The notes below the pieces were generated by a model that saw only the letters and a program-made list of their open reading frames with translations, did not search any database and was not told where the DNA came from. From the sequence record LR756511.1: a stretch of 64,000 nucleotides of DNA. The stretch is one strand, 5' to 3'. The first letter of the stretch is position 1, and each line of letters starts with the position of its first letter. Both the position numbers and the translations under genes were made by a program. Of the stretch, positions 368 to 62,342 are shown piece by piece.

Positions 368-635
368 GTACAGCTCAATTTGAAATTATGTTCCCTAAGT
401 CGTTACGGGGGAAATAGTTGCCCCGAAATTCGGACAGTTCAGTTTTTCCCCCGTTACTACCCCGTAGGGGGTATTTCCTCCCTGCGACGTATAAAATTTA
501 TTTGTCCTTTACGTCGCAAGTCCTTGCTGGCATTCCTTTAAGAATGCTCAATTTTCGCTGCACAATTCCTATTGACTGGTCCGCCAATGTCAGTTCATGC
601 AGACAATTGCCGCAAGTTGGTTCGGTTGTACAGCT
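368..635 (-). promoter_or_regulatory. Two minus-strand AGCTGTAC motif copies (368-375, 628-635)
   Basis: GTACAGCT read directly; they point out of the window, divergent from the + copies at 717 and 894. Confidence 0.7.
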
Positions 636-930
636 TGCGCCGCACAATTTGCGATGTGGTACATATGGGCAATACTGTACCCGCAATNCATGTAGCAATC
701 ACCTTTATGACCTTGAAGCTGTACTGTGTCAGTTTGCCCAAAAAGAAAACGGGCGGCTGTGGCTGTTTGACCACTGGCTCGCCCGTTTCCCCTCTGGATG
801 GTGTTTCGGAGGGTGGGGTAGTGAACATTTGCTTTTTCTTGGAATCTTTTTACCATTGGTGTTTTTTAGGGTAAAGTAGAGTAGCCAAGTTGAAGCTGTA
901 CAAACTTGGTTGTATTACGGAGGTTCGATC

Positions 931-1977
931 ATGGCTCACATGCTGGCGACTGACAATCAGGGACAGGCAATGATGGCTTACGCGGGAGCTACTCCCTGGC
1001 ATAGCCTGGGAACGGCAATTACGGATGAAGCGGTTTGCTATGATCCGCAGGCGTTCATGACCGTGGCGAAGATGGATTGGATGGCGCACAAGCGTCGTCT
1101 TTCCCGTCCCGTGCCGCAGGCGGATGGCACGGTTAAGCATGAGGACGCGAATGCGTGGGAAGTGTATCGGGAGTCGGACGGTGCTATCCTGGCGGATATG
1201 GTGGGCCAGCGTTATACCATTCTCCAGAACAAGGAAGCGTTCAACTGGTTCAAGCCGTTCCTTGAGGCAAAGGAAGCGGCGCTCCATACGGGCGGTGTCC
1301 TGTTCAATGGTTCACGCATTTGGATTCTGGCGAAGTTGAACCGTGATCCGATGGAGATTGCGGCGGGTGACATTGTGGAGAAGTATATTCTTCTCTCTCA
1401 CTCGCACGATGGTTCCCTTGCGGTGCGTGCGGGGTTCACGCCGATTCGCGTGGTTTGCTGGAATACGCTGAGCATGGCGCACAGCGACGAAGCTAGCAAG
1501 CTGATCCGTTTGAAGCATTCGAAGAACATTCATAAGAATCTCGATAATCTTCGGGATGTTATGAATGCGGTTAATGCGGAGTTTGAGGCGACGGCTGAGC
1601 AGTATCGGCTGTTGGTTTCGAAGGCCATTAACCAGGCCGATCTTCGCAAGTATGTGAAGCGGGTGTTTAAGGTGGACGCGGAAGATAACGTTATCTGGCC
1701 GACTGGCGAGCGTAGCAAGGAGATGAAGGAACTCTGCTCCGAGCGTCAGAAGCACATCTTGGAGGAAGTCTTCAAGCTGGTCGAGTCGGGCAAGGGTAAC
1801 AACCTTCCCAGCGTCAGCGGGACGTATTGGGCGGCATACAATGGGGTTACGGAGTATCTGAGCTACGTCAACGGACGTAACGAAGATAATCGTCTCAATT
1901 CCCTCTGGTATGGTGTCAATGCGACCACCAATAAGGAAGCATTGAAGGCTGCGGTGCAAATGGCAATGGCTGTTTAA
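931..1977 (+). CDS. DUF932 / TIGR03299 phage-plasmid family protein
   Basis: MAYAGATPWHSLG N-terminus, Y-x-ILQN-x-EAF, SHDGS...FTPIRVVCWNTL, YNGVTEY; GGAGG at 919-923 favours ATG 931. Confidence 0.85.
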   Translation: MAHMLATDNQGQAMMAYAGATPWHSLGTAITDEAVCYDPQAFMTVAKMDWMAHKRRLSRPVPQADGTVKHEDANAWEVYRESDGAILADMVGQRYTILQNKEAFNWFKPFLEAKEAALHTGGVLFNGSRIWILAKLNRDPMEIAAGDIVEKYILLSHSHDGSLAVRAGFTPIRVVCWNTLSMAHSDEASKLIRLKHSKNIHKNLDNLRDVMNAVNAEFEATAEQYRLLVSKAINQADLRKYVKRVFKVDAEDNVIWPTGERSKEMKELCSERQKHILEEVFKLVESGKGNNLPSVSGTYWAAYNGVTEYLSYVNGRNEDNRLNSLWYGVNATTNKEALKAAVQMAMAV

Positions 1978-2005
1978 CCCTATAGCAGCTGTACTTACAA
2001 TTCTT

Positions 2006-2260
2006 ATGAGAAAAAATGCGGTCTATCATGCGTGTCGTGTTGCGTTTCTTTGTGGGGACGAGAGGATTCCCTGGCATATGGTATGCCATGCAATCAGGCA
2101 AGGCATGGAGTCGCCTTTCATTACTTATAGGCTTCAAGAGAAGGATTATAAGAAGTATCCTCGCTTGAGGGAGCTTGTTGAGTGGATGAATGGGGAGCGG
2201 ACTCAAGAGACGGAACGTGAAGCTGTACGAAAGATTAATGAGAGGAAACGGGCCAGATAG
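2006..2260 (+). CDS. Hypothetical protein
   Basis: ORF follows motif 1987; its 3' end overlaps the tmRNA-like 5' end. Confidence 0.55.
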   Translation: MRKNAVYHACRVAFLCGDERIPWHMVCHAIRQGMESPFITYRLQEKDYKKYPRLRELVEWMNGERTQETEREAVRKINERKRAR

Positions 2261-2383
2261 GTTTCGACATAGGAAATCAGCAACTCCCCGTGCGTTGTGG
2301 CACAAGCTGAAAAAGGCCAACTGAATTAGGCTGGGAGCCAAGTGATATGCCTATGGACTTGGGTTCAAATCCCAACTGGTCCA
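2250..2383 (+). ncRNA. ssrA: Minimal tmRNA-like RNA (tRNA-like domain intact, mRNA-like domain very short)
   Basis: 5' GGGCCAG-ATAGGTTTCGAC; 3' GGAC-TTGGG-TTCAAAT-CCCAA-CTGGTCC-A; G3:U70 pair, discriminator A; P2 ATAGG/CCTAT; motif 2221 upstream. Confidence 0.8.
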
Positions 2384-2415
2384 CTTAAAGTAACCTTTTC
2401 TTGGAGGTTTGTGAC

Positions 2416-2754
2416 ATGCGGAAGCGGCCTGTTGTGACGCAAGTGACGGAACCCGTAGCAAAGATTCAGCACGATGCCAATTCGTATACTGCAATCTATG
2501 TCCTGCGGGATGCTACACAAAAGTTCCGTATGCCTGGAGTCAAGGACGAAAGCCCGCGTGCTTGGGATTATGGTCCCAGCATAATTACGGAGCGAGTGGG
2601 TCCGATGGGTTGTGAGACGGTGACGCATGATCCTGACAACAAAGCGGTCTGGAAGTGGTTGGGGGCATTGATTGCGATTGGTGCCTATGCCATGAACCAC
2701 GAAGAACTTGCGTCAAAGTTGCCTGTTGAGTTGAAGAACTATTGGGCAGCTTAA
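2416..2754 (+). CDS. Hypothetical protein
   Basis: GGAGG at 2403; stop abuts motif 2754. Confidence 0.7.
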   Translation: MRKRPVVTQVTEPVAKIQHDANSYTAIYVLRDATQKFRMPGVKDESPRAWDYGPSIITERVGPMGCETVTHDPDNKAVWKWLGALIAIGAYAMNHEELASKLPVELKNYWAA

Positions 2755-2798
2755 GCTGTACAAACTGACTTACCAAACTCAAAACCTGGAGTATAGTA

Positions 2799-3152
2799 AT
2801 GGATAAGACTTGGCAGAACTACGAGACGTGGGTAGTCGGTTTGTGGATTGACAACGATGAACCGCTCTACCATGAAGTCAAGGAAATGGCGCAGTCTGCG
2901 TGGGATGGTGCATGGCGGTTGTCCGCTAACGCACGCTTGACGGGGACCGAGCCATTTACCCGTGAGGAAAAGGCTTGCCTGAATCTTTCTCGTCAGTTGC
3001 AGAATAAGTTTGAGGAAGATAAGCCAGAGACGACGGGGGTTTGGGCGGATTTGCTTAATGCCGCCCTGGAAGAAGTGAACTGGAAGGAACTGGCCGAGCA
3101 TTTCCTTGAGAATATAGACAAGGAAAGCACTGATGAGGACGAGGAATGTTAG
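2799..3152 (+). CDS. Conserved phage hypothetical protein (W-x-NYETW...LWIDND type)
   Basis: Recognisable N-terminal pattern; GGAG RBS; motif 2754 upstream. Confidence 0.75.
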   Translation: MDKTWQNYETWVVGLWIDNDEPLYHEVKEMAQSAWDGAWRLSANARLTGTEPFTREEKACLNLSRQLQNKFEEDKPETTGVWADLLNAALEEVNWKELAEHFLENIDKESTDEDEEC

Positions 3153-3246
3153 AATTTGTGTTAGTTTTGCCTTTGATGATTTTGGTGGTGCTGATTTCAC
3201 CATATCTTTTGGTTCGTTGGCTTGTTAAAGCTGTACTGAGGGCCAT

Positions 3247-3414
3247 ATGCAAAAGAAAATGTGGGTAGTAACGTTGGTTAAGCCTCCTACTACTAATGAC
3301 TTTCGTTCAGATTATTTCCCGCGAAGGTTTCATTATAAGCGGGATGCGAATGAGTTGAAGGTGGAAGTGGAGCATAAGGGTGGGGAGGCGAAGGTAGAGC
3401 GAGCAAAGGATTAA
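3247..3414 (+). CDS. Hypothetical 55-aa protein
   Basis: Translated by hand (MQKKMWVVTLVKPP...); GAGG after motif 3229. Confidence 0.6.
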   Translation: MQKKMWVVTLVKPPTTNDFRSDYFPRRFHYKRDANELKVEVEHKGGEAKVERAKD

Positions 3415-3630
3415 AAAAAGCGGGACTCATGCGTAAGACTTAACCTGTTGGCTTAGCATGGGTATAGACAATTGCTTCAACCTTGAAACTGTCAACAGAG
3501 TTTTCGAGGGGACAAGAAGCTACCGCTTGGGGCGAAGCCATTATACTGTTTACAGTCAATGGTGGCATACGTTTCCGCTAATATGCCCAAAGTATAACAT
3601 GGAAACGTATGTTTTCAAGCGTCCCTTTTT
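3415..3630 (+). ncRNA. Candidate structured RNA
   Basis: GGGAC/GTCCC closing pair; 11-bp stem CATACGTTTCC 3566-3576 / GGAAACGTATG 3601-3611. Confidence 0.35.
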
Positions 3631-3688
3631 GAAGCTGTACTAAATGGTTCAAGCGACGAAACCAAAACACTCTTGAAAGGGGTCTACA

Positions 3689-4489
3689 ATGTCGGCTTTG
3701 GACAAACTGAGCAAGTTGCAGAAGAAGGTAAGCACGACGGAGAAGGTGAAGGAGACGCGGGAACGTCCTGAAATGACGGTGCCCGCCATTGTGAAGCTGG
3801 CATTTACCCGTTTGATTCCTGCTCAGCGTATTGCGAAGATTGCTGAGGAGCGCATTAAGATTGAGAATGCGCTTGTATCTGATGAAATGATCGGGGTTTA
3901 TGCTGATTGTTTGTTTTCGCAGGGTTGTCGTCCGACGAATCCCCGCATCAATTTGGAGAAGGATGGTCGGCCTGATATTTCGGGGCTGTTCCAGGTGCAG
4001 GAACGGTTCAAAGTTCAGTGCGAAAAGACGACGGCGCCATTGCGTGACCGTCTTATCAGCGCCTTTGTTTCGGCTGGAGTTGCTCCTGCCGTCGCTGAAA
4101 AGCTGGTGGAAATGGAGATTAAGTATCTTCCCACCACTACCCTAAAGAAGCCTCTTAATGAGCTTGCCGAAGGGACGGACGTTGAGAAGTCAGCGGCGGA
4201 AAAGATTATCGGTCTGTGTATCGGTGAAGCGGTTGAACCGTTGACCGATGACGAACGAGAAGCGGCAATTTTACAGTATGAAGTTGCCGAAGTCAAGGAT
4301 GGATTCCTTGAGCGTGTAAGGGGTTACGTCACTTCGGCACAGCAGTTGAAGCTGGTGTTTAAGGTTGTGACGCCTGTTCATTTTGTGAGTCATGGGAAGT
4401 TTGGCGAGTCGGATACGCCAGAGGAACAGGTCAAGCGATTGGCAGAGGAAGCGGCCAAGCTGGTTCTTGGCACGCCACTGAAGAAGTAA
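3689..4489 (+). CDS. Hypothetical protein, 266 aa
   Basis: Long ORF, RBS, motif 3633 upstream, terminator downstream. Confidence 0.8.
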   Translation: MSALDKLSKLQKKVSTTEKVKETRERPEMTVPAIVKLAFTRLIPAQRIAKIAEERIKIENALVSDEMIGVYADCLFSQGCRPTNPRINLEKDGRPDISGLFQVQERFKVQCEKTTAPLRDRLISAFVSAGVAPAVAEKLVEMEIKYLPTTTLKKPLNELAEGTDVEKSAAEKIIGLCIGEAVEPLTDDEREAAILQYEVAEVKDGFLERVRGYVTSAQQLKLVFKVVTPVHFVSHGKFGESDTPEEQVKRLAEEAAKLVLGTPLKK

Positions 4490-4509
4490 GCGGCACGGTC
4501 CTGTCCCAA

Positions 4510-4543
4510 GGGGAGTAGGGTAACACCTACTCCCCTCTTTTTT
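4510..4543 (+). terminator. Intrinsic terminator
   Basis: GGGGAGTAGG-GTAACA-CCTACTCCCC then a T-run. Confidence 0.8.
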
Positions 4544-4593
4544 GCGCCACTTGTTATAAAGCTGTACTTAAGGCTAAACAAAGGGGGATTATC

Positions 4594-4785
4594 ATGTTGC
4601 CGAATACTGTGGGCGAGTTGAGGGAGTTTATCAAGGGCTTGCCTGATGAAATGCCGTTCAATCTGGAAGTAGATGTTAGTGTGGATACTGTCAAGCTGGA
4701 GGTAGAGGATCAGCTTTCGGGCTATGACGGCAAGAATTACGTCTATAAGAAGATGTTGGTCTTGACGGTGGACGTGTCTTGTTAA
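4594..4785 (+). CDS. Hypothetical protein
   Basis: Between motifs 4560 and 4786; GGGGG RBS. Confidence 0.7.
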   Translation: MLPNTVGELREFIKGLPDEMPFNLEVDVSVDTVKLEVEDQLSGYDGKNYVYKKMLVLTVDVSC

Positions 4786-4807
4786 AGCTGTACTAAAAGG
4801 GTTTACC

Positions 4808-5113
4808 ATGAAAAAAACAATGTCAATTCTGATGGTTGTGGGCAAACGATGGTTTAATCGTGGCCCTGGTAACACCTACCATTCGGCAGCGATTTATGTC
4901 GATGGTGATTGTGTCCATAAGATTGATTATGCCTATGGTTATGGCGATCAATACTTATGGAATGCATCGCTTTGGCTGGAAGAAAATGGTTATCTTCCTG
5001 GTCGAACGCACAGCAGTAACGGAAGTCGTGAAGCCCTATGGCGTTATTGCGAGCGCATGGGGATTAAATTCTCTTACAATGTCTCTGATGTGCAAAGGAA
5101 GAAAGACCTTTAA
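4808..5113 (+). CDS. Conserved phage hypothetical protein
   Basis: KRWF...GNTYHSA...YGYGDQY pattern; between motifs 4786 and 5115. Confidence 0.75.
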   Translation: MKKTMSILMVVGKRWFNRGPGNTYHSAAIYVDGDCVHKIDYAYGYGDQYLWNASLWLEENGYLPGRTHSSNGSREALWRYCERMGIKFSYNVSDVQRKKDL

Positions 5114-5157
5114 CAGCTGTACTAAAAGCGTTGTAACTCTAACTCAAGGAGATTCAG

Positions 5158-5628
5158 ATGAGCGTTGAAGATGCCATGAAGGATTTGATTGATGACCGTA
5201 TTTCTGAGGCTGACCTGAGTGACAAGATTCAGGATGAACTGCCTAACTTCAATGAGAAGATCGAAGAGGCGCTGAAGGATCACGATTTCAGGGATGCGAT
5301 TTCGGATGCGTTGGACGATTACGACATGGATCAGGACATCGGCAAGGCGCTGGAGCATTTCGACTTTAGCGATGCGGTTTCGGAAGCGTTTAGCTATGAC
5401 CGTCGCGTTCAGCACACGCTTAAGACGGAAGTGCGTGAGCGGGTTGACGATCAGGTGGGCGAATATGTCCAGTCGCCCGAATTCGTTTCGCTGGTGCGTG
5501 GCGTGGTCGTTAATGTCCTTTGGGACATTTTCACGCTCAAGGCATTGCGGGGCAAGGCAACGGTGTATAAGGCGGAAGTGATTAAGTTCACAAAGGATCA
5601 GGTGAGTCGGCTCCGTAAGGCAGCTTAA
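5158..5628 (+). CDS. Acidic helical-repeat hypothetical protein
   Basis: AAGGAG RBS; repeated D-F-x-D-A-I/V-x-D/E-A pattern. Confidence 0.75.
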   Translation: MSVEDAMKDLIDDRISEADLSDKIQDELPNFNEKIEEALKDHDFRDAISDALDDYDMDQDIGKALEHFDFSDAVSEAFSYDRRVQHTLKTEVRERVDDQVGEYVQSPEFVSLVRGVVVNVLWDIFTLKALRGKATVYKAEVIKFTKDQVSRLRKAA

Positions 5629-5687
5629 AGCTGTACTAAACGTGGTTGTCGGTTAAACAACAACTTTTCTCTTTCTCAAGGGGGTGC

Positions 5688-6077
5688 ATGATGGCGTTCG
5701 AAGTGTTCGGTTCCTACCGTGGTGAGGCGATGGTGGCGGGTGATGCTCTGGAGGTTTACGATGACGGGGTTGTGAATCCCGCTCCGAAGCTTCGCAAGCC
5801 GCGCAATGACAAGGGCGTGCCGCGTGGCCCGCGTAAGGTTGCTCCGAAAGTGGTCGCAAAGACCGCTCCGAAGGGTAGCAAGCGTGGCCCTGGTCGCCCG
5901 CGTGTCTACAATGGTCAGGTTCGCCGTATTGTGGGGTCGTTCCTCAAGAAGTACGGTCTGACCAAGGGAATCGAGAAGCTTGCGACGGAACGCAAGATCA
6001 AGGTTTCCCTTACGCTGGCCCGCTCCGTTGCGGAACAGTATGGGATTGAGTTCAAGCTGGGTCGTCCCGCCGCGTAA
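5688..6077 (+). CDS. Basic protein with AT-hook-like motif, putative DNA-binding
   Basis: KRGPGRPR and GRP motifs; K/R-rich. Confidence 0.6.
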   Translation: MMAFEVFGSYRGEAMVAGDALEVYDDGVVNPAPKLRKPRNDKGVPRGPRKVAPKVVAKTAPKGSKRGPGRPRVYNGQVRRIVGSFLKKYGLTKGIEKLATERKIKVSLTLARSVAEQYGIEFKLGRPAA

Positions 6078-6086
6078 TGCGGCTAC

Positions 6087-6128
6087 GGGGAGCAGGGGCG
6101 GATGTGCCCCTGTCTCCCCTTTTCTTTT
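6087..6128 (+). terminator. Intrinsic terminator
   Basis: GGGGAG-CAGGGGC...GCCCCTG-TCTCCCC plus T-run. Confidence 0.75.
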
Positions 6129-6308
6129 GCCCTCTAGCTTTTTATAAAGCTGTACTAAAAACGGGTGTAGCTTTACCTTACTGGAGGATTGCAATGGATC
6201 GTGAAGAGATGATTGAAGTGATTGTGGCTGACGATTGCGGGGATGTTGTGGTTGTGCGGGTTTGAAAAGGCTGGCGATTGGGTTCACGATAACATCTAAA
6301 GCTGTAAA

Positions 6309-6392
6309 GGCCGCGTGGCGAAATTGGCAAACGCAACGGTCTTAAGAACCGTTACCCGTAAGGGTTTGCGGGTTCAAGTCCCGCCGTGGCTA
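6309..6392 (+). tRNA. tRNA-Leu(TAA)
   Basis: Acceptor GGCCGCG/CGTGGCT; anticodon arm ACGGT-CTTAAGA-ACCGT; long variable arm; GCGGG-TTCAAGT-CCCGC; CCA not encoded. Confidence 0.92.
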
Positions 6393-6435
6393 TTATAAAG
6401 CTGTACTTAAAGGGTTATCTCTAACGGAGGATAAC

Positions 6436-6729
6436 ATGGATCTACGCGACGCGCTGGACGAGTTTGAAACGCAGGAAAACCTGAGTCGAAATGAGGGGAC
6501 AACGGGCGTCAAGAATCTCTGTCGCATTGTTCACGCGATGGGATATAAGGACCGCCAGTATTTCGGACAATTCCATCAGGCGGGAAGTTATGGCGATCTA
6601 ATCACTTTCCTTGAGGACAATCCTGGCTGCGTGGAAGCAATCAAGGACTGGATTGCCGAGCAAGACGCGATGGAATGGGCGGAAGAGTTGGAATCGCATC
6701 TTGATGCGAAAGATGAGGACGAAGATTAA
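6436..6729 (+). CDS. Hypothetical protein
   Basis: GGAGG RBS; between motifs 6399 and 6729. Confidence 0.75.
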   Translation: MDLRDALDEFETQENLSRNEGTTGVKNLCRIVHAMGYKDRQYFGQFHQAGSYGDLITFLEDNPGCVEAIKDWIAEQDAMEWAEELESHLDAKDEDED

Positions 6730-6766
6730 GCTGTACAAACAGCATTAGTGAAACACTGTGCGAGAT

Positions 6767-6944
6767 GGACGAAGGGTAAGCCGTAAGCCAAGCGCACTGT
6801 CTATCCAGTCGGCAACGGTTCTCTGGCTGGCTCCATGCAGGGGTTAAGCTGGGGCAAGATTTCTCTAGCGCAACCGCGATAAAACGGCAACGCCCGATCA
6901 GGGTGGGGCCGCTGACGGTGAGGAAGCAACAGTTACCCTAGTCC
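6767..6944 (+). ncRNA. Candidate structured RNA
   Basis: Closing stem GGAC-GA-AGGGTAA / TTACCCT-A-GTCC; no ORF in the track; follows motif 6729. Confidence 0.45.
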
Positions 6945-6965
6945 GTTACATTCAAAGGGGCAATC

Positions 6966-7238: not shown

Positions 7239-7246
7239 AGGCTAAC

Positions 7247-7495: not shown

Positions 7496-7544
7496 AGAGA
7501 GTCATGCAGCTGTACAAAACGGTGTTGTGTAACTGAGTTCTAAC

Positions 7545-8039: not shown

Positions 8040-8062
8040 GATGAGACTGGTTTGCGAGACTG

Positions 8063-53275: not shown

Positions 53276-53277
53276 AC

Positions 53278-55341: not shown

Positions 55342-55352
55342 AATTAAACCCC

Positions 55353-55694: not shown

Positions 55695-55896
55695 TGAATT
55701 GTTGAGTATCTGGACGCCAGAAAGACGTTATGTAAGCTTTCGCTTCGTCTAACCCCTTAAACGTATTCAGATACCTTGTTGGGTTGTTAGGATTACATTT
55801 CGCCACTTCAACCGCATTCACTACAGCCAAATATTCATTTGAAATAACTGTAATAGTGCCGATTACCAGTGGCCCAATTGTTGCTGTATAACTCAT
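55666..55896 (-). CDS. Hypothetical protein
   Basis: After motif 55904. Confidence 0.55.
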   Translation of the reverse strand: MSYTATIGPLVIGTITVISNEYLAVVNAVEVAKCNPNNPTRYLNTFKGLDEAKAYITSFWRPDTQQFIVWSQNEPT

Positions 55897-55990
55897 GTCT
55901 TATGTACAGCTGTAGCCTTCAAAAAGGACGCGCGTGAGGTAGGCTCCCACATACACCTTACTTGGGCTTTTAGCAGGAGTTAGTCCCCCT

Positions 55991-56239
55991 CTAACCGCGC
56001 GTTTTATTCATGTAATGGAAATAACCAACTAGCTGACCTTCCGCATTATACCGATCCAACAGCTTAATCTTAATTTCCTTTACGTCTTCAGGATTAAGAT
56101 TCATTTCCTTGATACGATCAAAAACCTTTTGTGTATCCTGAATCTTCTCACCCGCATGAGCAGAACCATATGTAGACCACATTAAATGCTCTCTGCCGTC
56201 CCTAGTGACCGCAAAGACGTTATCAAGCAATCCCATCAT
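55991..56239 (-). CDS. Hypothetical protein
   Basis: Coupled ORF. Confidence 0.6.
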   Translation of the reverse strand: MMGLLDNVFAVTRDGREHLMWSTYGSAHAGEKIQDTQKVFDRIKEMNLNPEDVKEIKIKLLDRYNAEGQLVGYFHYMNKTRG

Positions 56240-56739
56240 TTTGCAAACTCCAGTAATCGTTTAATATATTCCGTCGCCTTCTCATAACTCCACGCATGAA
56301 TCAACTGGCCCTCCTTCGTAGTATCTTCATGCGGAAAGATTTCTTGAGCATTTTGCTTAACATCCGTGCCCTTCCAAGAGATAGAGATAACCCGCTTTCG
56401 CCAGCCAATCTCAACAGGGCCAATCTTCGTGGTTACAATAAACCAGGGGCGATGAGAGCAACACCAATCATTACAGTAACCATTAGGGATTTCTTTAACG
56501 TAAACTTCGTTGGAGAAGCAAGCCAGAAGCTTCGCTTTCTCAATACGCGCATTTTCCATTCGCTCAGGGTCAGAACGAACATAAGTTGTAAGAATCATCT
56601 TCTTGATTTCTTCAACCTTATCCTCGATGAAATTAAATTCGCTTTCGGTGAGATTACGAGTAAGGGCAACATCAACCTTAATCCCATAAGTAAAATCTCC
56701 ACCAATCGACTCTCGCTTGCAAACTTCTTTATAGTTCAC
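56236..56739 (-). CDS. Conserved phage hypothetical protein
   Basis: EIPNGYC...PWF-x-VTT-x-x-G-x-x-x-IGWRKRVI pattern. Confidence 0.75.
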   Translation of the reverse strand: MNYKEVCKRESIGGDFTYGIKVDVALTRNLTESEFNFIEDKVEEIKKMILTTYVRSDPERMENARIEKAKLLACFSNEVYVKEIPNGYCNDWCCSHRPWFIVTTKIGPVEIGWRKRVISISWKGTDVKQNAQEIFPHEDTTKEGQLIHAWSYEKATEYIKRLLEFAK

Positions 56740-56998
56740 TGGTTTCTCCCTTCGTTTGTTGCCTTATCTCCCAAGCGGCAATGAGCAATTTATCCCGTTC
56801 ATCGCAGAATTGTTCCGCTTCCTTAATCGAATTAAATGGAATCTGGTGAAAATCCCACCCTTCCATTACAAGGTAATATCCATTGCCATTGACGTTAGGC
56901 GGGAAGTAATAGATTTCATAGCCTCGATATTTCTTAACCAATTCGTAGCCCATTATTGCACCTTCCTCGCCCATCTTGTGTACAGCTTCGACTTCCAA
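56729..56998 (-). CDS. Hypothetical protein
   Basis: Tiled ORF. Confidence 0.55.
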   Translation of the reverse strand: MEVEAVHKMGEEGAIMGYELVKKYRGYEIYYFPPNVNGNGYYLVMEGWDFHQIPFNSIKEAEQFCDERDKLLIAAWEIRQQTKGETSEL

Positions 56999-58119
56999 GA
57001 ATCGTCCTCATCTTCAAACTCATTACAGACAATCCAAATGCTTAGTCCAACATTTACCGCAACGGTTAGGAAAAATGTCAGCATCACCGTCCACATCGGC
57101 GGCTCAACGGTCAAATAGTCAAAATCCTTAAAATGCTTACGCACGAATCCAGCCTGAACCTTCTCCCCCACCACATCTACCGACTTACCAAGATCAAACT
57201 TATCTTGTTCAATAATAAACTGCTTAACTTCCGCCTTGAGCATTTCTTGCTCAGTCCAACTAATAACATGGCACCACTTAACCTTTTCCCCATCCAGCCC
57301 AACCGCAACAATAAATTCGTTCTTATTGCCGCCTTGCCAGTGGTTTTCCTGATTAAGAGCAACGTCGAATGGAAGATCGTGATACAGAGCAAAAATCAAG
57401 CGGCATTGTTTATTATGTCCATTGCGAGCGTTCCAAAGAGTAAGCTTACGCTCCGCAACAGGGTCCGCGCCGCCAAGAATGAATTGAGAGTCATAGAATC
57501 CACGCACCAGCGGATATTCATACAACCCTTCCTTAGAATCAGGCTCAGGGAATTTGAATACACTATTGCTGGCGATAACCCTGTTCTTATAGCGATGCTG
57601 AGTAGTGCAAATCTCGCACTTATCATCGCTACCGTCCCAATTCGAAGCATACTTGTTGCCATTAATCGAATGATAATGGCGATGCATATTAATGAACTGT
57701 TTATTACCAAACTTCTGAACCAATTCAGAAAACTTACGCTCATTAACGCCAACCGTAATGCCATTGGTATCAACGACTTGCCAAACGGGAGGATGATAGT
57801 CTACGTCATACGCATGTTCGTAGCCGTCTTGGACTTCTGACGTAGTGCCATCCGAATTCTTAACGGTCTTATATTTGGGGTGACGGCATGGAACTTCTTC
57901 ATCCCATGCCTCATAGAATTCGGCGGTTTGAACGGCTCCAGTCCACCATTCTGTATCGGAAGTCTGAACAGCTTCGACAGTCCACTTGAGGATAAAGCAA
58001 AGAATCAGGGACACGCCAAAGGGAATGAGGAATTCCCACCACTTAGTTTTATGCTTGAAATAAGCATAGAGAAGGATTGCTGTAATGATAGGAATAATCA
58101 TTGAGCAGTAGATAAGCAT
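56953..58119 (-). CDS. Membrane-anchored protein (TPM-like central domain)
   Basis: N- and C-terminal TM segments; W-x-GGNKNE-x-IV. Confidence 0.75.
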   Translation of the reverse strand: MLIYCSMIIPIITAILLYAYFKHKTKWWEFLIPFGVSLILCFILKWTVEAVQTSDTEWWTGAVQTAEFYEAWDEEVPCRHPKYKTVKNSDGTTSEVQDGYEHAYDVDYHPPVWQVVDTNGITVGVNERKFSELVQKFGNKQFINMHRHYHSINGNKYASNWDGSDDKCEICTTQHRYKNRVIASNSVFKFPEPDSKEGLYEYPLVRGFYDSQFILGGADPVAERKLTLWNARNGHNKQCRLIFALYHDLPFDVALNQENHWQGGNKNEFIVAVGLDGEKVKWCHVISWTEQEMLKAEVKQFIIEQDKFDLGKSVDVVGEKVQAGFVRKHFKDFDYLTVEPPMWTVMLTFFLTVAVNVGLSIWIVCNEFEDEDDSWKSKLYTRWARKVQ

Positions 58120-58126
58120 ATATTCC

Positions 58127-58345
58127 TCAACGGTCTATTGAACTTTCACTAATGTATTCTTGAATCTCAGACAGGTTGACGATTGACTGGCCAATTCTCG
58201 CTCTTTGTTGTTCTTTTGATACGTCAAAGCTGTTCATGTATTCATGAAGAAGACTAGCCGCTTCTTCCAGGTCTTTCAACCATTGTACAGCTGTGCGACT
58301 TTCAACGTTCATGTTTCTTCTCCCCTTACATAACGTCTTATACAA
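58127..58345 (-). CDS. Hypothetical protein
   Basis: Tiled ORF. Confidence 0.55.
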   Translation of the reverse strand: MYKTLCKGRRNMNVESRTAVQWLKDLEEAASLLHEYMNSFDVSKEQQRARIGQSIVNLSEIQEYISESSIDR

Positions 58346-58506
58346 GCGGCATAGCGGGATGCCGTAAACCCAGCGGGGACTAGATTGTTGTCAACAATGA
58401 ACGATCTAATCTGGTTGAATTCAAGGCATCCAGCCTCTATACATCGCTTGGAAGTCCGTTCCATAACCTTATGGCGGTCCCAAGCTAATTTTTCAGCAAA
58501 TGACAT
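58309..58506 (-). CDS. Hypothetical protein
   Basis: Tiled ORF. Confidence 0.55.
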   Translation of the reverse strand: MSFAEKLAWDRHKVMERTSKRCIEAGCLEFNQIRSFIVDNNLVPAGFTASRYAACIRRYVRGEET

Positions 58507-58905
58507 TTATAGCAGCGTTTCCCATTTTATGACAGGTGCAACTTCGATTGAAATAATAGTATGGATTCCGTGTTCGCCAAATGGAAGATAACTCTCAAAA
58601 ATATCAAAAACCTTATCGTTAAATCCTTTATAGACTTTTCTAGGCGGCAGTTCGCCCAAATCTTCCCGTGGACAGTATTCGCCATGAGGATAATTATTGC
58701 TATGCGTCCAAGTCATTCCGTCAACTTTAGTGGTATATGGTTTGAATGCCTTAATAGCCTCAATCAAAGGCTTAATTTTATTCAAGTCAGCATCGGAAAT
58801 CTGCGATATTTCAGTTACATAATCAGCATCGTTCGTATCAGCCTTGATCTTAATTTCCCACATCTTTTTCTTCGTCGCCACGGCAATGACTCCTTTATGT
58901 CTCAT
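58507..58905 (-). CDS. Conserved phage hypothetical protein
   Basis: ADTNDADY...P-x-GE-x-GIHTI-x-SI pattern. Confidence 0.7.
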   Translation of the reverse strand: MRHKGVIAVATKKKMWEIKIKADTNDADYVTEISQISDADLNKIKPLIEAIKAFKPYTTKVDGMTWTHSNNYPHGEYCPREDLGELPPRKVYKGFNDKVFDIFESYLPFGEHGIHTIISIEVAPVIKWETLL

Positions 58906-59089
58906 AACCCAATCGCTTCTTGAGTTCCTTGACCCTTATTCTCAAGCAATCTACGCAAGTTACTTGGTCCTCAACATAGCTGAGATGGACCTGATCGTGC
59001 CCACTAATGCCAAGCACTTTGCCACAGAGAGCCATTAAATCACTGCCCATACCACAGTGAATCAAACCATCTGGCGGTTCTGTTCTCAT
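58895..59089 (-). CDS. Small Cys-containing protein
   Basis: LCG...VTC-x-x-C. Confidence 0.6.
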   Translation of the reverse strand: MRTEPPDGLIHCGMGSDLMALCGKVLGISGHDQVHLSYVEDQVTCVDCLRIRVKELKKRLGYET

Positions 59090-59313
59090 TAATACCTCTC
59101 GTAAACATCCTTAATTGCTGCCGCAAACCCCTCGCAATCTTGCTTGTCTCCTTCAAGATCGAAGTCAATGGATTCGTTTTGAAGGGCGATAGTTCCATTG
59201 AGCCTAAAGGCCGCAGCGAGTTTCTTTAGATGCGGCATAGCCGCACCCAAATCTTCGTTGTAGCCTTTAAGCGTAAGTTTAGCCTTGTAAGTATGCATTA
59301 GCACTGATACCAT
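59089..59313 (-). CDS. Hypothetical protein (weak acylphosphatase-fold resemblance)
   Basis: L-x-G-x-I...EG...F pattern only. Confidence 0.45.
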   Translation of the reverse strand: MVSVLMHTYKAKLTLKGYNEDLGAAMPHLKKLAAAFRLNGTIALQNESIDFDLEGDKQDCEGFAAAIKDVYERY

Positions 59314-59564
59314 CGGTTATTGGTTGTTACCCAAATAAACCACTTCTCATCTTGAGAACCTTTGCCATGCCCACCAGGAGGCACCAGCTTAATCTGCCCA
59401 TGCTTCTTGGCGAATTCATGTAAGTCTTCAATTTCGACTTCATAATCGCCACGCATTTCACCCGTAGGCTTACCACTAAAGTAGTGAACTTCATGTTCGC
59501 CTACCTTAATAGCTTCGGGAACGGGAGGCTGTTTACCATACCAATGAGCAATGGCATATCTCAT
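59298..59564 (-). CDS. Hypothetical protein
   Basis: Tiled ORF. Confidence 0.6.
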   Translation of the reverse strand: MRYAIAHWYGKQPPVPEAIKVGEHEVHYFSGKPTGEMRGDYEVEIEDLHEFAKKHGQIKLVPPGGHGKGSQDEKWFIWVTTNNRWYQC

Positions 59565-59749
59565 AATGAATCACTGTTCGTTTTTGTTTCTTTCAAGAAA
59601 GCAGAAAGTTCTTCGTCTGTTAAAAACTCGCCCGTAGTCCAGTATGGCTTGCACGGCGCATATTCACTATAGTTTCCATTCGGGTCTATAAACTTAGGGG
59701 GAACAAACACCGTGCCACCATTCCAGTCAACATAAAAAGCTATCGACAT
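59561..59749 (-). CDS. Hypothetical protein
   Basis: Coupled ORF. Confidence 0.55.
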   Translation of the reverse strand: MSIAFYVDWNGGTVFVPPKFIDPNGNYSEYAPCKPYWTTGEFLTDEELSAFLKETKTNSDSL

Positions 59750-59754
59750 TACGG

Positions 59755-60294
59755 TTACTTCTGGAACAGGGTTTGGTCATCCTTACCAGTTTCAAACACT
59801 TCTTCCGTATTGGTAGAAGTGACGATAGTAACATCGACCTTGGCGCGGCCAGCCAGGAACCATGAAGACGGAGGCTGATCGAGCAACGTATCATGCTGCC
59901 GCTTCAAATCCCGAAGCTTCTTCTGCTCACGCAGAAACATCTTCCGCTCCGCTTCAATCGACGCCATCAAATCCTTATAAAGCGAAGTATCAAACTTCGG
60001 GTTCGCTTCCTTGACGAACTGCATAAGCAACTGCTTCCGATCTTCATATCGACCAGCAATCAGCTTCGGGTAAATCTCAGCGAAGGCGTTCTTATACTCG
60101 CTGGTAACACCCGCCTTGTCCTTGAGAATCTTCCACATGGTATCATGGGAAGCCTTATTGGTATCTTGCTGAGCCTCAATCTGGTTACGCAACTGGACTT
60201 CTGACCGTGCGCAACTCATCCAGTAGAAACCCATCAGCAAAACCACGCCAAGAAACACTCCACCAACCGCCAGAACCTTGCTAAAGTTACTCAT
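59755..60294 (-). CDS. LemA-like membrane protein
   Basis: N-terminal TM; LRNQIEAQ; P-x-FDTSLYKDLM-x-x-IEAER. Confidence 0.7.
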   Translation of the reverse strand: MSNFSKVLAVGGVFLGVVLLMGFYWMSCARSEVQLRNQIEAQQDTNKASHDTMWKILKDKAGVTSEYKNAFAEIYPKLIAGRYEDRKQLLMQFVKEANPKFDTSLYKDLMASIEAERKMFLREQKKLRDLKRQHDTLLDQPPSSWFLAGRAKVDVTIVTSTNTEEVFETGKDDQTLFQK

Positions 60295-60302
60295 AAATCC
60301 TC

Positions 60303-60569
60303 CTAGACTTGTGTGTGAAAAATACTGATATTCTTTACCTTCATAGAGTCTCCAGCCTTAGAATTGGCAATAAATTCATTGACCAATTCAAAGGCCAAAG
60401 GCTCATGAACAAACTTAGCTCGCAATTCAACTGGAAGTAAAAGCTTTGAAGTAATTGCTCCTTCCTTGTTGATAAGAATGAGGAAACGGTCAGGAACCAT
60501 CGACTTCTTAATCCGTTCGATGAGATTCATGTTCCCCTTACGTTTAGCAGTCAACATCCTAGTCACCAT
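60303..60569 (-). CDS. Hypothetical protein
   Basis: Tiled ORF. Confidence 0.55.
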   Translation of the reverse strand: MVTRMLTAKRKGNMNLIERIKKSMVPDRFLILINKEGAITSKLLLPVELRAKFVHEPLAFELVNEFIANSKAGDSMKVKNISIFHTQV

Positions 60570-60789
60570 GACCCCTTTGATCTAAATGGACAACGCCATT
60601 ACTTAATTCATTTACCTTAATCATTAAATACGCATAATCTAAATGGACAACGCCATTACTTAATTCATTTACCTTAATCATTAAATACGCATAATCGTAA
60701 TTGGTCAAAGGGACAATCTTACGACTCTCCCCTTTCCTCTTTCGTTGGTACAGCTGCCAGATTTGAGCTAGCCTTTTCTTCTTGTTCAA
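60559..60789 (-). CDS. Hypothetical protein with internal 19-aa duplication
   Basis: DYAYLMIKVNELSNGVVHL occurs twice. Confidence 0.5.
   Translation of the reverse strand: MNKKKRLAQIWQLYQRKRKGESRKIVPLTNYDYAYLMIKVNELSNGVVHLDYAYLMIKVNELSNGVVHLDQRGHGD
60580..60696. repeat. 57-bp perfect tandem duplication
   Basis: 60580-60636 equals 60637-60693. Confidence 0.95.
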
Positions 60790-60958
60790 GAATCACCATC
60801 GCTTCTTCTAGTTTTCTACGAACCGCACCAAAGTATCCAGGGCTAAAATTCCCTTGCGGCCCGCCAAGAAACCGATCTATCAGCACCGCGAGCAACGCTT
60901 GATCCGTAATCGCCATATTGGGATTTAAACCTAATATTAAGATCGCCCGCTGGAGCAT
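60719..60958 (-). CDS. Hypothetical protein (start uncertain)
   Basis: Tiled ORF. Confidence 0.45.
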   Translation of the reverse strand: MLQRAILILGLNPNMAITDQALLAVLIDRFLGGPQGNFSPGYFGAVRRKLEEAMVILEQEEKASSNLAAVPTKEERGES

Positions 60959-61033
60959 AGATTGTATATTGGTAGGGGCGGTTTAAATTATCATGTTTTT
61001 CACCGCACGCTACACTTAGAGGCGGAAGATTCT

Positions 61034-61432
61034 TTACTGTGAACATAATCTCCCCCGAATATCGCCCTCAAGTTTCGCATTCTTAATAAGCTCCAGAATA
61101 TTTAGAGCTTCAGGATAAGAGATACGTTCCTTGAGAGTAACAGGCGAACCCTGCTCCTCTACGAAATCCTTAGCCTCTCTTAATCCCAAATTTAGAACTT
61201 CGCGGGTGAGCTTAATAACCCGAATCTTCTGTTCAGGACTCCAGTGAACGACTACGGCATGGTCAAAATGCTCAACAATCTGAATTTGCGTCGGCATTTT
61301 GGTATGCAAAACGCCCTTGTTATCCATAAGGGTAACATAAAGCTGTTCTCGATCTTGATGAACAAGAACAATTTCGCCACGGTCGCCGCAATCGTTAAAC
61401 ATCGCCAATCGACCAAGCAAATTAGTAAGCAT
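61034..61432 (-). CDS. Protein with C-terminal ribosomal bL12 (L7/L12)-CTD-like domain
   Basis: QKIRVIKLTREVLNLGLREAKDFVE. Confidence 0.7.
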   Translation of the reverse strand: MLTNLLGRLAMFNDCGDRGEIVLVHQDREQLYVTLMDNKGVLHTKMPTQIQIVEHFDHAVVVHWSPEQKIRVIKLTREVLNLGLREAKDFVEEQGSPVTLKERISYPEALNILELIKNAKLEGDIRGRLCSQ

Positions 61433-61612
61433 GTTTAACTTTCTTCCTTATAAACCTCAAAGCTGTCTTTGATAATTGTTACAGATTCACCAGTTGAAGG
61501 ATCGGTTAAGTTAATATTGAACTTAATAATCCTTCCCCACTCCCGATATTCGTCGCTAATATCCAGACTCAGATTGTCCTTCAAATACTCAAATACTTCT
61601 TGCTTAGTCATG

Positions 61613-61984
61613 CTAGTCCCAAAAGTTCACCTTTTTACATTTGTTACACCGAAATAGAGGATACATTTCGTCTGGAATATGCGTGCTATGATTGTAGAGA
61701 CAGGCACCACAATCGCAGAATGCAACACCTTCATGTAACGTATTACATTCCTTGCAATAGGTGCGATGCCCGCCACCTTCGACCCAATCTTTACCAATCT
61801 CCTCCGTTGGCAGAATAGCCTTTTTGGTATCGCCTTCGAAGTTAATAATGGTAACGCATTCCCATTCCCCATTAACTTCTTTGACGGTCCCTAACTGAAC
61901 CTTGCCGTGAAAACGGTTCTCATAGCTACAAGAAAGGGTGCCATCATCTGCCGTAACCCAAGTATAAGGACTGGTAGTAGTCAT
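61613..61984 (-). CDS. Zinc-ribbon hypothetical protein
   Basis: CKEC, CDCG, C-x-KC motifs. Confidence 0.65.
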   Translation of the reverse strand: MTTTSPYTWVTADDGTLSCSYENRFHGKVQLGTVKEVNGEWECVTIINFEGDTKKAILPTEEIGKDWVEGGGHRTYCKECNTLHEGVAFCDCGACLYNHSTHIPDEMYPLFRCNKCKKVNFWD

Positions 61985-62267
61985 TCAGAAATAATCTCCC
62001 CAACGCTCAGCTTGAGCTTATATTCAGCGATATAGATGAATTCACGCCACTTGCGCGACCCATCCGTTTGTTCAGGACCACACTTCTGAAATTGAAGAAT
62101 GCCCTTATCAAACATAATTGCGGCACTATCAAACTTGGTGCCAGGGGGTGTTTGCCAACCTGAACCTTAAGGACAGGATTATAAAAAATCATGCACTCAA
62201 TGTCGCCATCCCACTCTTCCCAATCAAAAATTTGGCACTCAATGGTCTGCTTTTCGGTTGCATTCAT
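61981..62267 (-). pseudogene. Gene with apparent 1-nt deletion in the G5 run at 62144-62148
   Basis: VGKHP continues as PGTKFDSAAIMFDKGILQFQ in the shifted frame. Confidence 0.55.
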
Positions 62268-62342
62268 GGTATCTCCTTTGTTTTCTTCGTTCATTCGTTG
62301 TTTGTACAGCTGGGAATTTGTGTTCTAGGACTAGATAGAAGT

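What the first reader, a model, noticed from the sequence alone, without database searches (positions are those of the whole stretch)
368..62311. An 8-bp motif (AGCTGTAC) marks about 90 gene starts and follows transcription direction
Seen: by manual count about 55 copies on + (717-19183) and about 38 on - (368, 628, then 19097-62311); a few may be missed. About one per strand is expected by chance in 64 kb. Consensus is (A/C)AGCTGTAC(A/T/G)(A/T)AA. Orientation matches gene direction everywhere except the convergence zone. Copies sit mostly 10-40 nt before start codons or RNA 5' ends, and are missing from 45831-55903, which includes the structural cluster. The motif fits neither sigma70 -35/-10 nor T4 early, middle or late consensus. 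Inference: a dedicated early-expression system of an uncharacterised phage group. Three models fit: (a) promoter or activator site; (b) RNA-level processing, antitermination or translation element, since RBS-like GAGG/AGGA starts only 2-4 nt after the motif at 12795, 13723 and 33363; (c) recombination boundary for gene cassettes.
Basis: partly seen in the sequence, partly recalled or inferred. Interest (0 to 1): 0.9.

Follow-up and report, generated by a model that had tools for sequence, protein, structure and literature searches.

The report
Genome-specific promoter motif of huge phages
An invariant 8-base word (AGCTGTAC) sits just upstream of about 90 small genes and RNA genes at one end of a 595-kb phage genome; it is most likely the core of a phage-specific promoter, each related huge phage has its own variant, and the protein that reads it is still unknown.

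Summary
AGCTGTAC occurs 93 times in the window, where about 1 is expected. The window is the first 64 kb of the 595-kb uncultured phage LR756511.1.

- **Distribution:** there are 134 copies genome-wide, always in gene orientation. Density falls from 0 to about 300 kb, and the late/structural half is at chance level.
- **Invariance:** one-mismatch variants are at background.
- **Context:** copies lie in intergenic cassettes, often terminator hairpin, T-run, motif, leader, then start codon. Some precede a tmRNA-like RNA or tRNA genes.
- **Spacing:** the distance to ATG peaks sharply at 10-11 nt, mostly without a Shine-Dalgarno (SD) sequence, or is 12-50 nt with one.
- **Relatives:** related huge phages carry the same system with their own invariant variants (AGTTGTAC, GGTTGTAC, AATTGTAC, ATTTGTAC), kept before orthologous genes.

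Best reading: this is the core of a start-site-proximal promoter of a pre-late gene class, read by a phage-encoded factor that co-evolves with it. It is arranged like the T4 PeSL cassettes, but the promoter is not sigma70-like. No phage RNA polymerase was found. Transcript 5'-end mapping is needed.

The parts
717..19183 (+). Array of 55 AGCTGTAC copies on the + strand. Each lies before a small gene, about one copy per 330 bp.
   Evidence: Flank consensus is T(A/G)A-AGCTGTAC-(T/A)AAA.
19097..62311 (-). 36 copies on the - strand, before a subset of the roughly 119 tightly packed - strand genes. The spacing looks like operon heads.
368..635 (-). Two - strand copies (368-375 and 628-635), left of the divergence point.
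17349..17422 (+). Complete regulatory cassette. It contains a GC-rich hairpin, a T-rich tract, TATAA, AGCTGTAC, the leader TTAATACATTACCTCTAACGC and the SD sequence AAAGGAG.
   Evidence: the repeat finder family D5; fold.
18628..18701 (+). Second copy of the same 74-nt cassette, 99% identical, in front of an unrelated gene.
   Evidence: no paralogy between array genes at E<1e-6.
2221..2386 (+). Motif (2221-2228) followed 21 nt later by a tmRNA-like non-coding RNA (2250-2386).
   Evidence: Rfam RF00023, 50.4 bits against a gathering score of 47.
894..1977 (+). Motif (894-901) followed by a DUF932 gene (931-1977). In four relatives the orthologous gene is preceded by that genome's own motif variant.
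8119..9962 (+). An AAA_33 kinase gene (8141-8587) and a T4 Rnl1-type RNA ligase gene (8856-9962). Each has its own motif (8119 and 8818). Two further copies lie inside the ligase ORF (9348 and 9793).
10398..10831 (+). Two examples of the SD-less class. Motif 10398-10405 is followed by ATG 10416, and motif 10625-10632 by ATG 10643. Both gaps are exactly 10 nt.
6309..6406 (+). tRNA-Leu(taa) at 6309-6392, with the next motif starting 7 nt after its 3' end.
45831..55903 (-). Motif-free stretch. It includes genes whose N-termini resemble tail fibre proteins (50194-54342).
   Evidence: PHROGs tail fibre families at E 1e-6 to 2e-8 and phrog_19068.
19048..19446 (.). Convergence zone between the + array and the - strand genes. 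It has strong hairpins at 19048-19072 and 19411-19446.

Best explanation
AGCTGTAC is the invariant core of a phage-specific promoter that drives a pre-late (early/middle-type) class of genes in a huge, distantly T4-related phage.

**Shown**
- The word is invariant and co-oriented with genes.
- It is confined to the ORFan-rich half of the genome.
- It lies in intergenic terminator-promoter-leader cassettes.
- It also precedes non-coding RNA genes.
- In related phages a genome-specific variant replaces it at the same places.

**Inferred**
- Transcription starts within, or at most about 2 nt after, the 3' end of the word. The basis is that strong Shine-Dalgarno sequences can begin 1-4 nt after it.
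- The element is read by a phage-encoded specificity protein that co-evolves with it. This protein either retargets the host RNA polymerase or is an unrecognised polymerase. It is either delivered with the DNA or made very early.
- The class includes a conserved sigma factor gene. That sigma probably switches on a later class, and the isolated TATATA elements in front of the structural genes are the candidate targets.
- The repeated cassettes also serve as homology patches that shuffle gene cassettes, as PeSLs do in T4-like phages.
For: **Statistics**
- 93 copies against 0.98 expected in the window.
- 134 copies against about 6 expected genome-wide; it is the top 8-mer.
- One-mismatch variants are at background.

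**Position**
- Distances to the next ATG-initiated ORF cluster at 10-11 and 25-50 nt.
- Over 236 sites in 11 loci, the distance to ATG peaks at 10 nt (36 sites) and 11 nt (12 sites). It is empty at 16-19 nt and broad at 20-50 nt, where SD sequences are present.

**Terminators upstream**
- Hairpin plus T-run ends within 65 nt upstream of 40% of + array copies, against 10.8% of random positions. In relatives the figures are 13-33% against 6-9%.
- Only 10-20 bp remain between the T-run and the motif, so there is no room for another promoter.

**Non-coding targets**
- A tmRNA-like RNA starts 21 nt after the motif at 2221.
- In L061, tRNA-Tyr/Glu start about 20 nt after a motif copy.

**No sigma70-type promoters to do the job**
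- 23 sites against 17.3 expected in 1-20 kb.
- The first 200 kb are at shuffle level.

**Gene content of the class**
- rIIA, RNA ligases, NAPRTase, HNH and a sigma factor, and a kinase.
- The motif is absent from the portal/terminase/baseplate region and from the tail-fibre-like stretch.

**Co-evolution across relatives**
- Each 21-kb relative locus holds 34-38 same-strand copies of its own variant: AATTGC-RATTGTAC-CA, AATTGM-GGTTGTAC-TRA, CTT-AGCTGTAC-CRAG and CTT-AGTTGTAC-CAA.
- In 15 related loci or contigs the sigma-1 orthologue has its genome's variant about 45-60 nt before the ATG. A 16th contig (L083) starts too close to the gene to tell, and in L075 the motif was not seen upstream.
Against: - There are no transcript 5' ends, so the promoter function and start site are inferred.
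- No reader has been identified.
  - No homologue of rpoB/rpoC, T4 gp55 or phiKZ RNAP subunits was found by phmmer.
  - No DFDGD or T7-type motif was found.
  - No RNAP Pfam domain was found in any of the 44 predicted genes of at least 500 aa.
- The conserved sigma-1 does not co-vary with the motif. The L081 and L069 proteins are 85% identical, and identical in the region-2.4-like helix, yet their motifs differ (ATTTGTAC against AGCTGTAC).
- Sigma-2 exists only in this genome.
- An element that abuts the start site is not the geometry of sigma70-family promoters.
- The sharp 10-nt spacing to SD-less ATGs would be explained more simply by a start site about 10 nt downstream (leaderless mRNA). 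This conflicts with the SD-adjacent cases.
- By crude gene calls, about 12 window copies lie well inside ORFs.
Confidence: 0.75

Rival explanations
1. RNA-level element. The motif is transcribed and acts in the mRNA as one of two things. It could be a cleavage site for a phage endoribonuclease that cuts long early transcripts into single mRNAs, with the upstream hairpins stabilising the 3' ends. Or it could be a ribosome-recruiting or translation-control element placed at a fixed distance from the start codon.
For: - The spacing to SD-less start codons is sharp: 48 of 236 sites at 10-11 nt, and only 11 of those have any SD-like 4-mer.
- SD sequences can start 1-4 nt after the motif.
- Some copies lie inside ORFs.
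- T7 early RNA is processed between genes by RNase III (textbook knowledge), so there is a precedent.
Against: - Bona fide intrinsic terminators (stems of 8-11 bp followed by TTTTCTTTTT) end 10-20 nt upstream of many copies, and no other conserved promoter lies in between.
- The motif also precedes tRNA and tmRNA-like genes, which need no translation signal.
- The variable bases differ between phages whereas ribosomal RNA targets would not.
- In the - strand region only about one gene in three has a copy, as expected for operon heads rather than a per-gene translation signal.
Confidence: 0.13
2. Recombination site as the primary function. The 8-mer and its cassette exist mainly as a crossover point for gaining, losing and moving gene cassettes, either through a site-specific enzyme or as a homology patch.
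For: - Repeated cassettes of up to 74 nt, some 99% identical, flank unrelated ORFans.
- A conserved gene backbone is interspersed with genome-specific genes.
- At least six cassettes sit at different positions in relatives, for example window 6436-6729, 11930-12310 and 18393-18626.
- PeSLs do this in T4-like phages (PMC2839356, PMC4122927).
Against: - A pure crossover site would not need a fixed distance to start codons, strict co-orientation with genes, or exclusion from the late half of the genome.
- The same motif heads conserved, syntenic genes such as sigma-1, rIIA and DUF932.
- The only recombinase-family hit (684 aa, Pfam Recombinase) lies far away and was not linked to the motif.
Confidence: 0.05
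3. Genome-architecture or defence-related word. Examples are a Chi-like or KOPS-like polar sequence oriented with replication, a nicking site, or a target of a modification or restriction enzyme.
For: - It is a strictly invariant, strand-polar 8-mer.
- It contains two 4-bp palindromes, AGCT and GTAC.
- GTAC is otherwise avoided in the genome, at O/E 0.51.
Against: - Polarity flips with gene direction at about 0.65 and 19.2 kb, not with a replication arm.
- Copies are intergenic and 10-50 nt from start codons, and absent from half the genome.
- Variants in relatives lose AGCT.
Confidence: 0.03

Closest known systems
PeSL (promoter-early stem-loop) cassettes in hyperplastic regions of T4-like phages (PMC2839356, PMC4122927)
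   Same: - Both are short composite terminator stem-loop plus promoter cassettes, ending in an SD sequence and a start codon.
- Both are repeated between small ORFan genes in a plastic genome region of a phage with T4-type portal and terminase.
- In both, cassettes and their genes are shuffled between relatives.
   Different: - PeSL promoters match the host sigma70 consensus (-35, -10, AT-rich upstream). Here there is no -35 or -10 pattern, only an invariant 8-mer that differs between related phages.
- Only about 40% of copies have the stem-loop.
- Recombination at the cassettes was not demonstrated here.
[quoted passage not shown]
   Same: - Both are highly conserved short motifs that can be found bioinformatically upstream of early operons.
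- Both lie close to the start site and have no -35 element.
- Both are 'different from phage to phage' (PMC7598289).
   Different: - Those motifs are about 10-nt AT-rich words centred near -10. This one is mixed in composition and seems to abut the start site.
- Those phages encode split beta/beta' RNAP subunits and are not T4-like. No such genes were found here.
Promoters of T7-group single-subunit RNA polymerases (T7, T3, SP6, K11; textbook knowledge)
   Same: - Both are contiguous conserved blocks directly upstream of the start site. With flanks, the block here is about 11-19 bp.
- Both are nearly identical within a genome.
   Different: - No T7-like polymerase gene was found: no Pfam RNA_pol hit in any predicted gene of at least 500 aa and no catalytic motif.
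- The core is shorter.
- There are roughly 10 times more copies per genome.
T4 late promoters (TATAAATA), read by gp55 with gp33 and the gp45 clamp (textbook knowledge)
   Same: Both are promoters made of one nearly invariant 8-bp word without a -35 element. Both occur in the T4 lineage and mark one temporal gene class.
   Different: - The sequence, the gene class (pre-late against late) and apparently the distance to the start site all differ.
- No gp55 homologue was found.
- The isolated TATATA element in front of this phage's structural genes is the closer analogue of T4 late promoters.

Membership tests
Sigma70-type promoter (host or T4 early/PeSL type) | -35 TTGACA-like and -10 TATAAT-like hexamers 16-18 bp apart | tested here: not met
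   - Consensus scan of 1-20 kb gives 23 sites against 17.3 +/- 3.8 in shuffles. Most are on the wrong strand and none coincides with the motif series.
- No conserved positions lie upstream of -6.
- The genome-wide scan is at shuffle level in the first 200 kb.
PeSL cassette of T4-like phages | Composite stem-loop terminator plus promoter in intergenic regions between ORFans of a hyperplastic region | tested here: met
   - Hairpin plus T-run is present upstream of 22 of 55 + array copies, against 10.8% of random positions.
- Repeated cassettes of 39-74 nt are present.
- Genes between them are unrelated to each other and mostly genome-specific.
PeSL cassette of T4-like phages | The promoter part is a strong sigma70-like early promoter | tested here: not met
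PeSL cassette of T4-like phages | Mediates indels and exchange by recombination between cassettes (mini-circles, breakpoints in the cassettes) | tested here: inconclusive
   Cassette-gene units occupy different positions in relatives. However, the relatives are too divergent (62-76% aa identity) to place breakpoints.
T4 middle promoter (MotA/AsiA) | MotA box centred at -30 plus a sigma70 -10 element downstream | tested here: not met
   Start codons lie 10-11 nt after the motif in 48 of 236 sites, which leaves no room for a -10 element and start site downstream. The sequence is unlike TGCTT.
T4 late promoter (gp55) | TATAAATA word about 6 nt upstream of the start, and a gp55-type sigma encoded by the phage | tested here: not met
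   The word is different, and there is no phmmer hit to T4 gp55.
T7-group single-subunit RNAP promoter | The phage encodes a T7-like RNA polymerase | tested here: not met
   - No Pfam RNA polymerase domain in any of the 44 predicted genes of at least 500 aa.
- No T7 catalytic motifs.
- This does not exclude a very divergent or split enzyme.
T7-group single-subunit RNAP promoter | Contiguous conserved block abutting the start site, with lineage-specific specificity positions | tested here: inconclusive
   The block and the lineage-specific positions were seen. The start site is only inferred, from SD sequences beginning 1-4 nt after the motif.
phiKZ-like jumbo phage early promoter (virion RNAP) | Genes for split beta/beta'-like RNAP subunits | tested here: not met
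   - phmmer with E. coli RpoB/RpoC and phiKZ gp55/68/71/73/74/80 gave nothing below E = 0.02.
- No DFDGD motif in any ORF of at least 60 aa.
phiKZ-like jumbo phage early promoter (virion RNAP) | AT-rich ~10-nt motif centred near -10, different from phage to phage, upstream of early operons | tested here: inconclusive
   The motif is phage-specific and lies upstream of presumed early genes, so those parts are met. It is not AT-rich, and its position relative to the start site is unknown.

The most novel reading that the evidence does not exclude
A clade of huge, distantly T4-related phages uses a promoter-recognition system of an unrecognised kind. It reads a start-site-abutting word (NNY-TGTAC) that co-evolves with it. 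The system is coupled to a distinct mode of translation start on SD-less leaders of exactly 10-11 nt.
Probability: 0.35. Interest if true: 0.8.

Novelty: new variant of a known kind. Interest (0 to 1): 0.62.

Why it matters
Huge phages are known almost only from metagenomes, and how they express their genes is unknown. This motif supplies four things.

- **A transcription map.** It gives a ready-made map of about 134 transcription units for one of the largest phage genomes. It also splits the genome into a pre-late half and a half with isolated TATATA elements.
- **A natural specificity series.** The variants AGCT-, AGTT-, GGTT-, AATT- and ATTT-GTAC across relatives allow the unknown reader to be found by co-variation or pull-down, and then tested by swapping.
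- **A new example of cassette architecture.** The T4 'mobile regulatory cassette' arrangement can be built on a promoter that is not sigma70-like.

The sharp 10-nt SD-less leaders also give a concrete case for studying SD-independent initiation.

Tried and rejected
- **Literature search for the 8-mer.** It returned about 2,000 papers, and the 20 listed were unrelated cell-biology, virology and poultry papers. The accession LR756511 is cited nowhere in the library. The source paper does not mention promoters of this phage. Two further searches on jumbo or huge phage promoters gave only phiKZ/AR9-type work and a PhagePromoter run on phage G.
- **Scan of IMG/VR for ATAAAGCTGTACTTAA.** It gave 46 single, apparently chance hits and no relative. 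Relatives were reached through the DUF932 protein instead.
- **Alternative genetic code as the reason for the small ORFs.** Rejected: recoding any stop codon adds few long ORFs.
Its gene is always under the motif, but closely similar sigma-1 proteins go with different variants.
It is split into two ORFs and has no homologue outside this genome.
- **Single-protein pattern scans for sigma-1 and sigma-2.** They found nothing. An alignment-based scan found 2 loci in IMG/VR and 4 in metagenomes.
- **Phage RNA polymerase search.** I used phmmer seeds, catalytic-motif regexes, Pfam and PHROGs on large ORFs, and PDB sequence searches of four large orphan proteins. All were negative.
- **Short sigma-1 contigs as possible transcript-like assemblies starting at the motif.** Their ends are unrelated to it.
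- **Reading the motif as an extended -10 (TG-TACYAA) with leaderless starts.** This is attractive for the 10-nt class. It is contradicted by the 12-15-nt class, in which 12 of 13 sites have an SD directly after the motif.

Full report
**What the window is.** The window is identical to the first 64 kb of LR756511.1, an unannotated 595,163-bp 'uncultured phage' genome. I read the rest of the record (64,001-595,163) as loci L001-L011. I did not look up the single N near window position 688. The standard genetic code fits. The phage has a T4-type portal (E 2.6e-73, with an intein) and a T4-type large terminase at 531-537 kb. It also has a DnaE-type polymerase, PrkA, rIIA, 64 tRNA genes called by ARAGORN and a tmRNA. 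Its terminase is only about 31% identical to the nearest catalogued phages, which infect Flavobacterium, Microcystis and Synechococcus. Genes in the window are very small, with a median of 80-100 aa and a maximum of 450 aa.

**The observation.** AGCTGTAC occurs 93 times in the window, 55 on + and 38 on -, against 0.98 expected.
- Genome-wide there are 134 copies. 55 are + copies in 0.7-19.2 kb. The - copies thin out from 19 kb to about 300 kb. Only 3 copies lie in 300-595 kb, which is about chance.
- It is by far the most over-represented 8-mer of the genome.
- All 24 one-mismatch variants are at background and show no strand bias. The only exception is AGCTtTAC, which belongs to a repeated leader. 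The word is therefore invariant, not a degenerate consensus.
- Flanks are T(A/G)A upstream and (T/A)AAA downstream in the + array, and (T)T(G/A)(C/A) upstream further into the genome.

**Anatomy.** In the + array the motif lies in repeated intergenic cassettes of 39-74 nt. Each has a GC-rich hairpin, a T-rich tract, TATAA, AGCTGTAC, a leader such as TTAATACATTACCTCTAACGC, AAAGGAG and then ATG. Two copies of the cassette are 99% identical although the genes behind them are unrelated.
- A terminator-like hairpin with a T-run ends within 65 nt upstream of 40% of + array copies, against 10.8% of random positions.
- Elsewhere the motif follows, or overlaps, the stop codon of the upstream gene.
- Sigma70-type promoters are not enriched.
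- The motif also precedes non-coding RNA genes. A tmRNA-like RNA starts 21 nt after the copy at 2221. In relative L061, a tRNA-Tyr/tRNA-Glu pair starts about 20 nt after a copy.
- Outside the window, genes headed by the motif include rIIA (E 2.4e-110), two RNA-ligase-type proteins, an HNH endonuclease, an AAA ATPase, NAPRTase and a sigma factor.
- In the window they include a DUF932 protein and a kinase plus Rnl1-type RNA ligase pair.
- The motif-free stretch 45.8-55.9 kb holds proteins with tail-fibre-like N-termini.
- The structural modules at 510-575 kb have no copies.

**Spacing to start codons.** I pooled 236 sites from this genome and ten related loci.
- The distance from the end of the word to the first ATG that opens an ORF has a sharp peak at 10 nt (36 sites) and 11 nt (12 sites). 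Only 11 of these 48 sites have any SD-like 4-mer.
- 13 sites lie at 12-15 nt, and 12 of them have an SD that begins 1-5 nt after the word, for example AGCTGTAC-g-AAGGAGG-aacaa-ATG.
- No sites lie at 16-19 nt.
- A broad group lies at 20-50 nt, nearly always with an SD.
- For the SDs right after the word to work, the RNA must start in or just after the word. This places the word directly upstream of the start site.
- The sharp 10-nt class would be explained more simply by a start about 10 nt downstream, giving leaderless mRNA. I cannot reconcile the two without 5'-end data, and I record this as unexplained.

**Relatives.** Through the DUF932 protein I found contigs of 130-390 kb from related huge phages, at 62-76% identity. 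Each 21-kb locus has 34-38 same-strand copies of its own invariant word in the same kind of context:
- AATTGC-(A/G)ATTGTAC-CA
- AATTG(A/C)-GGTTGTAC-T(A/G)A
- (A/C/G)CTT-AGCTGTAC-C(A/G)AG
- (G/C)CTT-AGTTGTAC-CAA

More relatives were reached through the sigma-1 family, which has 39 members at 43-66% identity on contigs of up to 623 kb. They use AGCTGTAC, AATTGTAC, GGTTGTAC, AGTTGTAC or ATTTGTAC. TGTAC is constant and the three bases before it are lineage-specific.

Orthologous genes keep a copy in front of them, written in the local variant. This holds for DUF932 in five genomes. The sigma-1 orthologue has it in 15 related loci or contigs. A 16th contig (L083) starts too close to the gene to tell, and in L075 the motif was not seen upstream. 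Invariance within a genome, change between genomes and constant placement together are the signature of a cis element co-evolving with a phage-encoded reader. The promoters of T7-group phages, and the early promoters of phiKZ-like phages that are 'different from phage to phage' (PMC7598289), behave in the same way.

**Who reads it?** This is unresolved.
- I found no RNA polymerase.
- There are two sigma70-family genes.
- Sigma-1 lies at genome 152,574-153,575 and is 333 aa long. Its Pfam Sigma70_r2 hit is borderline, and its best PDB sequence hits are all sigma factors. The AlphaFold model has pLDDT 77, and its top 39 Foldseek matches are sigma-A chains of initiation complexes, aligned over the full length. 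It is conserved across the clade and is always a target of the motif.
- The sigma-1 proteins of L081 and L069 are 85% identical, and identical in the region-2.4-like helix, yet their motifs differ at two core positions. More likely it is the switch to a later class.
- Sigma-2 lies at 190.4-191.4 kb. It has a region-4 hit at E 4.5e-12, is split into two ORFs, and has no homologue outside this genome.
- A candidate later class exists. Upstream regions in 300-595 kb are enriched for an isolated TATATA word with no -35 element. It stands before the terminase gene and other large structural-region genes, often with ATG 4-8 nt after it.

**Comparison with known systems.** The architecture is that of T4-like PeSL cassettes: a stem-loop terminator plus an early promoter between ORFans of hyperplastic regions, which mediates modular shuffling (PMC2839356, PMC4122927). 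Cassette-gene units have indeed moved between relatives. The defining sigma70-like promoter is replaced by a genome-specific invariant word. Functionally it resembles promoters read by phage-encoded polymerases (T7 group, phiKZ-like virion RNAP), but the defining polymerase genes were sought and not found. I therefore rate it a new variant of a known kind, namely a phage-specific promoter class within a PeSL-like cassette architecture.

**Verdict.** The finding is real, not an artefact, and was not described in the literature I could search. I put the probability that the motif is a promoter core at 0.75.

Noticed in passing
whole genome (window + L001-L011) and all related loci L061-L075: The tetranucleotide CCGG is completely absent. 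It occurs 0 times in 595,163 bp, where about 1,013 copies are expected, and 0 times in each of 11 related loci, where 16-72 are expected per locus. GGCC (O/E 0.47), GTAC (0.51) and GCGC (0.59) are also depleted. This suggests clade-wide selection against an HpaII/MspI-type nuclease, either of the host or of the phage itself.
   Followed up: partly
genome 300-595 kb (L005-L011), e.g. upstream of L010:21401-23242 (terminase) and L011:5769-10691: There is a second promoter-like class: an isolated TATATA word with no -35 element, upstream of genes in the structural half of the genome. In 37 cases the ATG lies 4-8 nt after it, which looks leaderless. In others the gap is 17-30 nt and an SD sequence is present. 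This resembles T4 late promoters.
   Followed up: partly
L002:38574-39575 (-), genome 152574-153575: This is a conserved sigma70-family factor (sigma-1, 333 aa). Its AlphaFold model matches full-length sigma-A chains. It is always preceded by the local motif variant and a C/A-rich leader (aaacccaaaccc...aggta). Synteny is conserved: DUF6166, sigma, SpoU methylase, AAA, ArdC-like.
   Followed up: yes
L003:26451-27387 (-), genome 190451-191387: This is a second sigma70-like gene, with a clear region 4, split into two overlapping ORFs. This may be a frameshift or a sequencing error. It lies next to an HNH/DUF968-like ORF and a PARP/WGR-domain protein, and has no homologue elsewhere in the protein collection.
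   Followed up: partly
window 2250-2386 (+) and 48527-48647 (-): There is a short tmRNA-like RNA of 137 nt, just above the Rfam gathering score. There is also a 121-nt tRNA match, which may carry an insert or intron. ARAGORN called neither.
   Followed up: no
window 9348-9355 and 9793-9800; L061 about 16479: Motif copies lie inside the RNA ligase ORF. The L061 orthologue has its own variant at nearly the same internal place, just upstream of the conserved YACEFCSLWNK segment. This may be an internal promoter.
   Followed up: no
window 19451-19458 (-) with hairpin 19411-19446; L061 about 8641; L063 about 8540: In three genomes a motif copy is followed within a few bases by a strong hairpin and no ORF. 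This could be a very short transcript or an attenuator, or the motif may overlap a terminator of the opposite strand.
   Followed up: no
L008:30162-34055 (+) and L010:17014-19587 (-): The ribonucleotide reductase large subunit and the portal protein both carry inteins, with intein and LAGLIDADG domains.
   Followed up: no
L003:15588-15661 (-); L005:26614-26689 (-); L006:27280-27632 (-): Three further RNA genes were called: a tRNA with a CUA anticodon (amber-suppressor type, called 'Pyl' by ARAGORN), a tRNA with a four-base anticodon, and a full tmRNA with the tag ANPEFAMAA.
   Followed up: no
L006:32926-35010 and L006:29529-31109; L002:213-1784 and 5935-7620: The phage encodes PrkA and SpoVR homologues (a bacterial stress and sporulation-associated pair) and two Ser/Thr protein kinases. 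It also encodes NAD synthase, NAPRTase, CTP synthase, an aldehyde dehydrogenase and a TPP enzyme.
   Followed up: no
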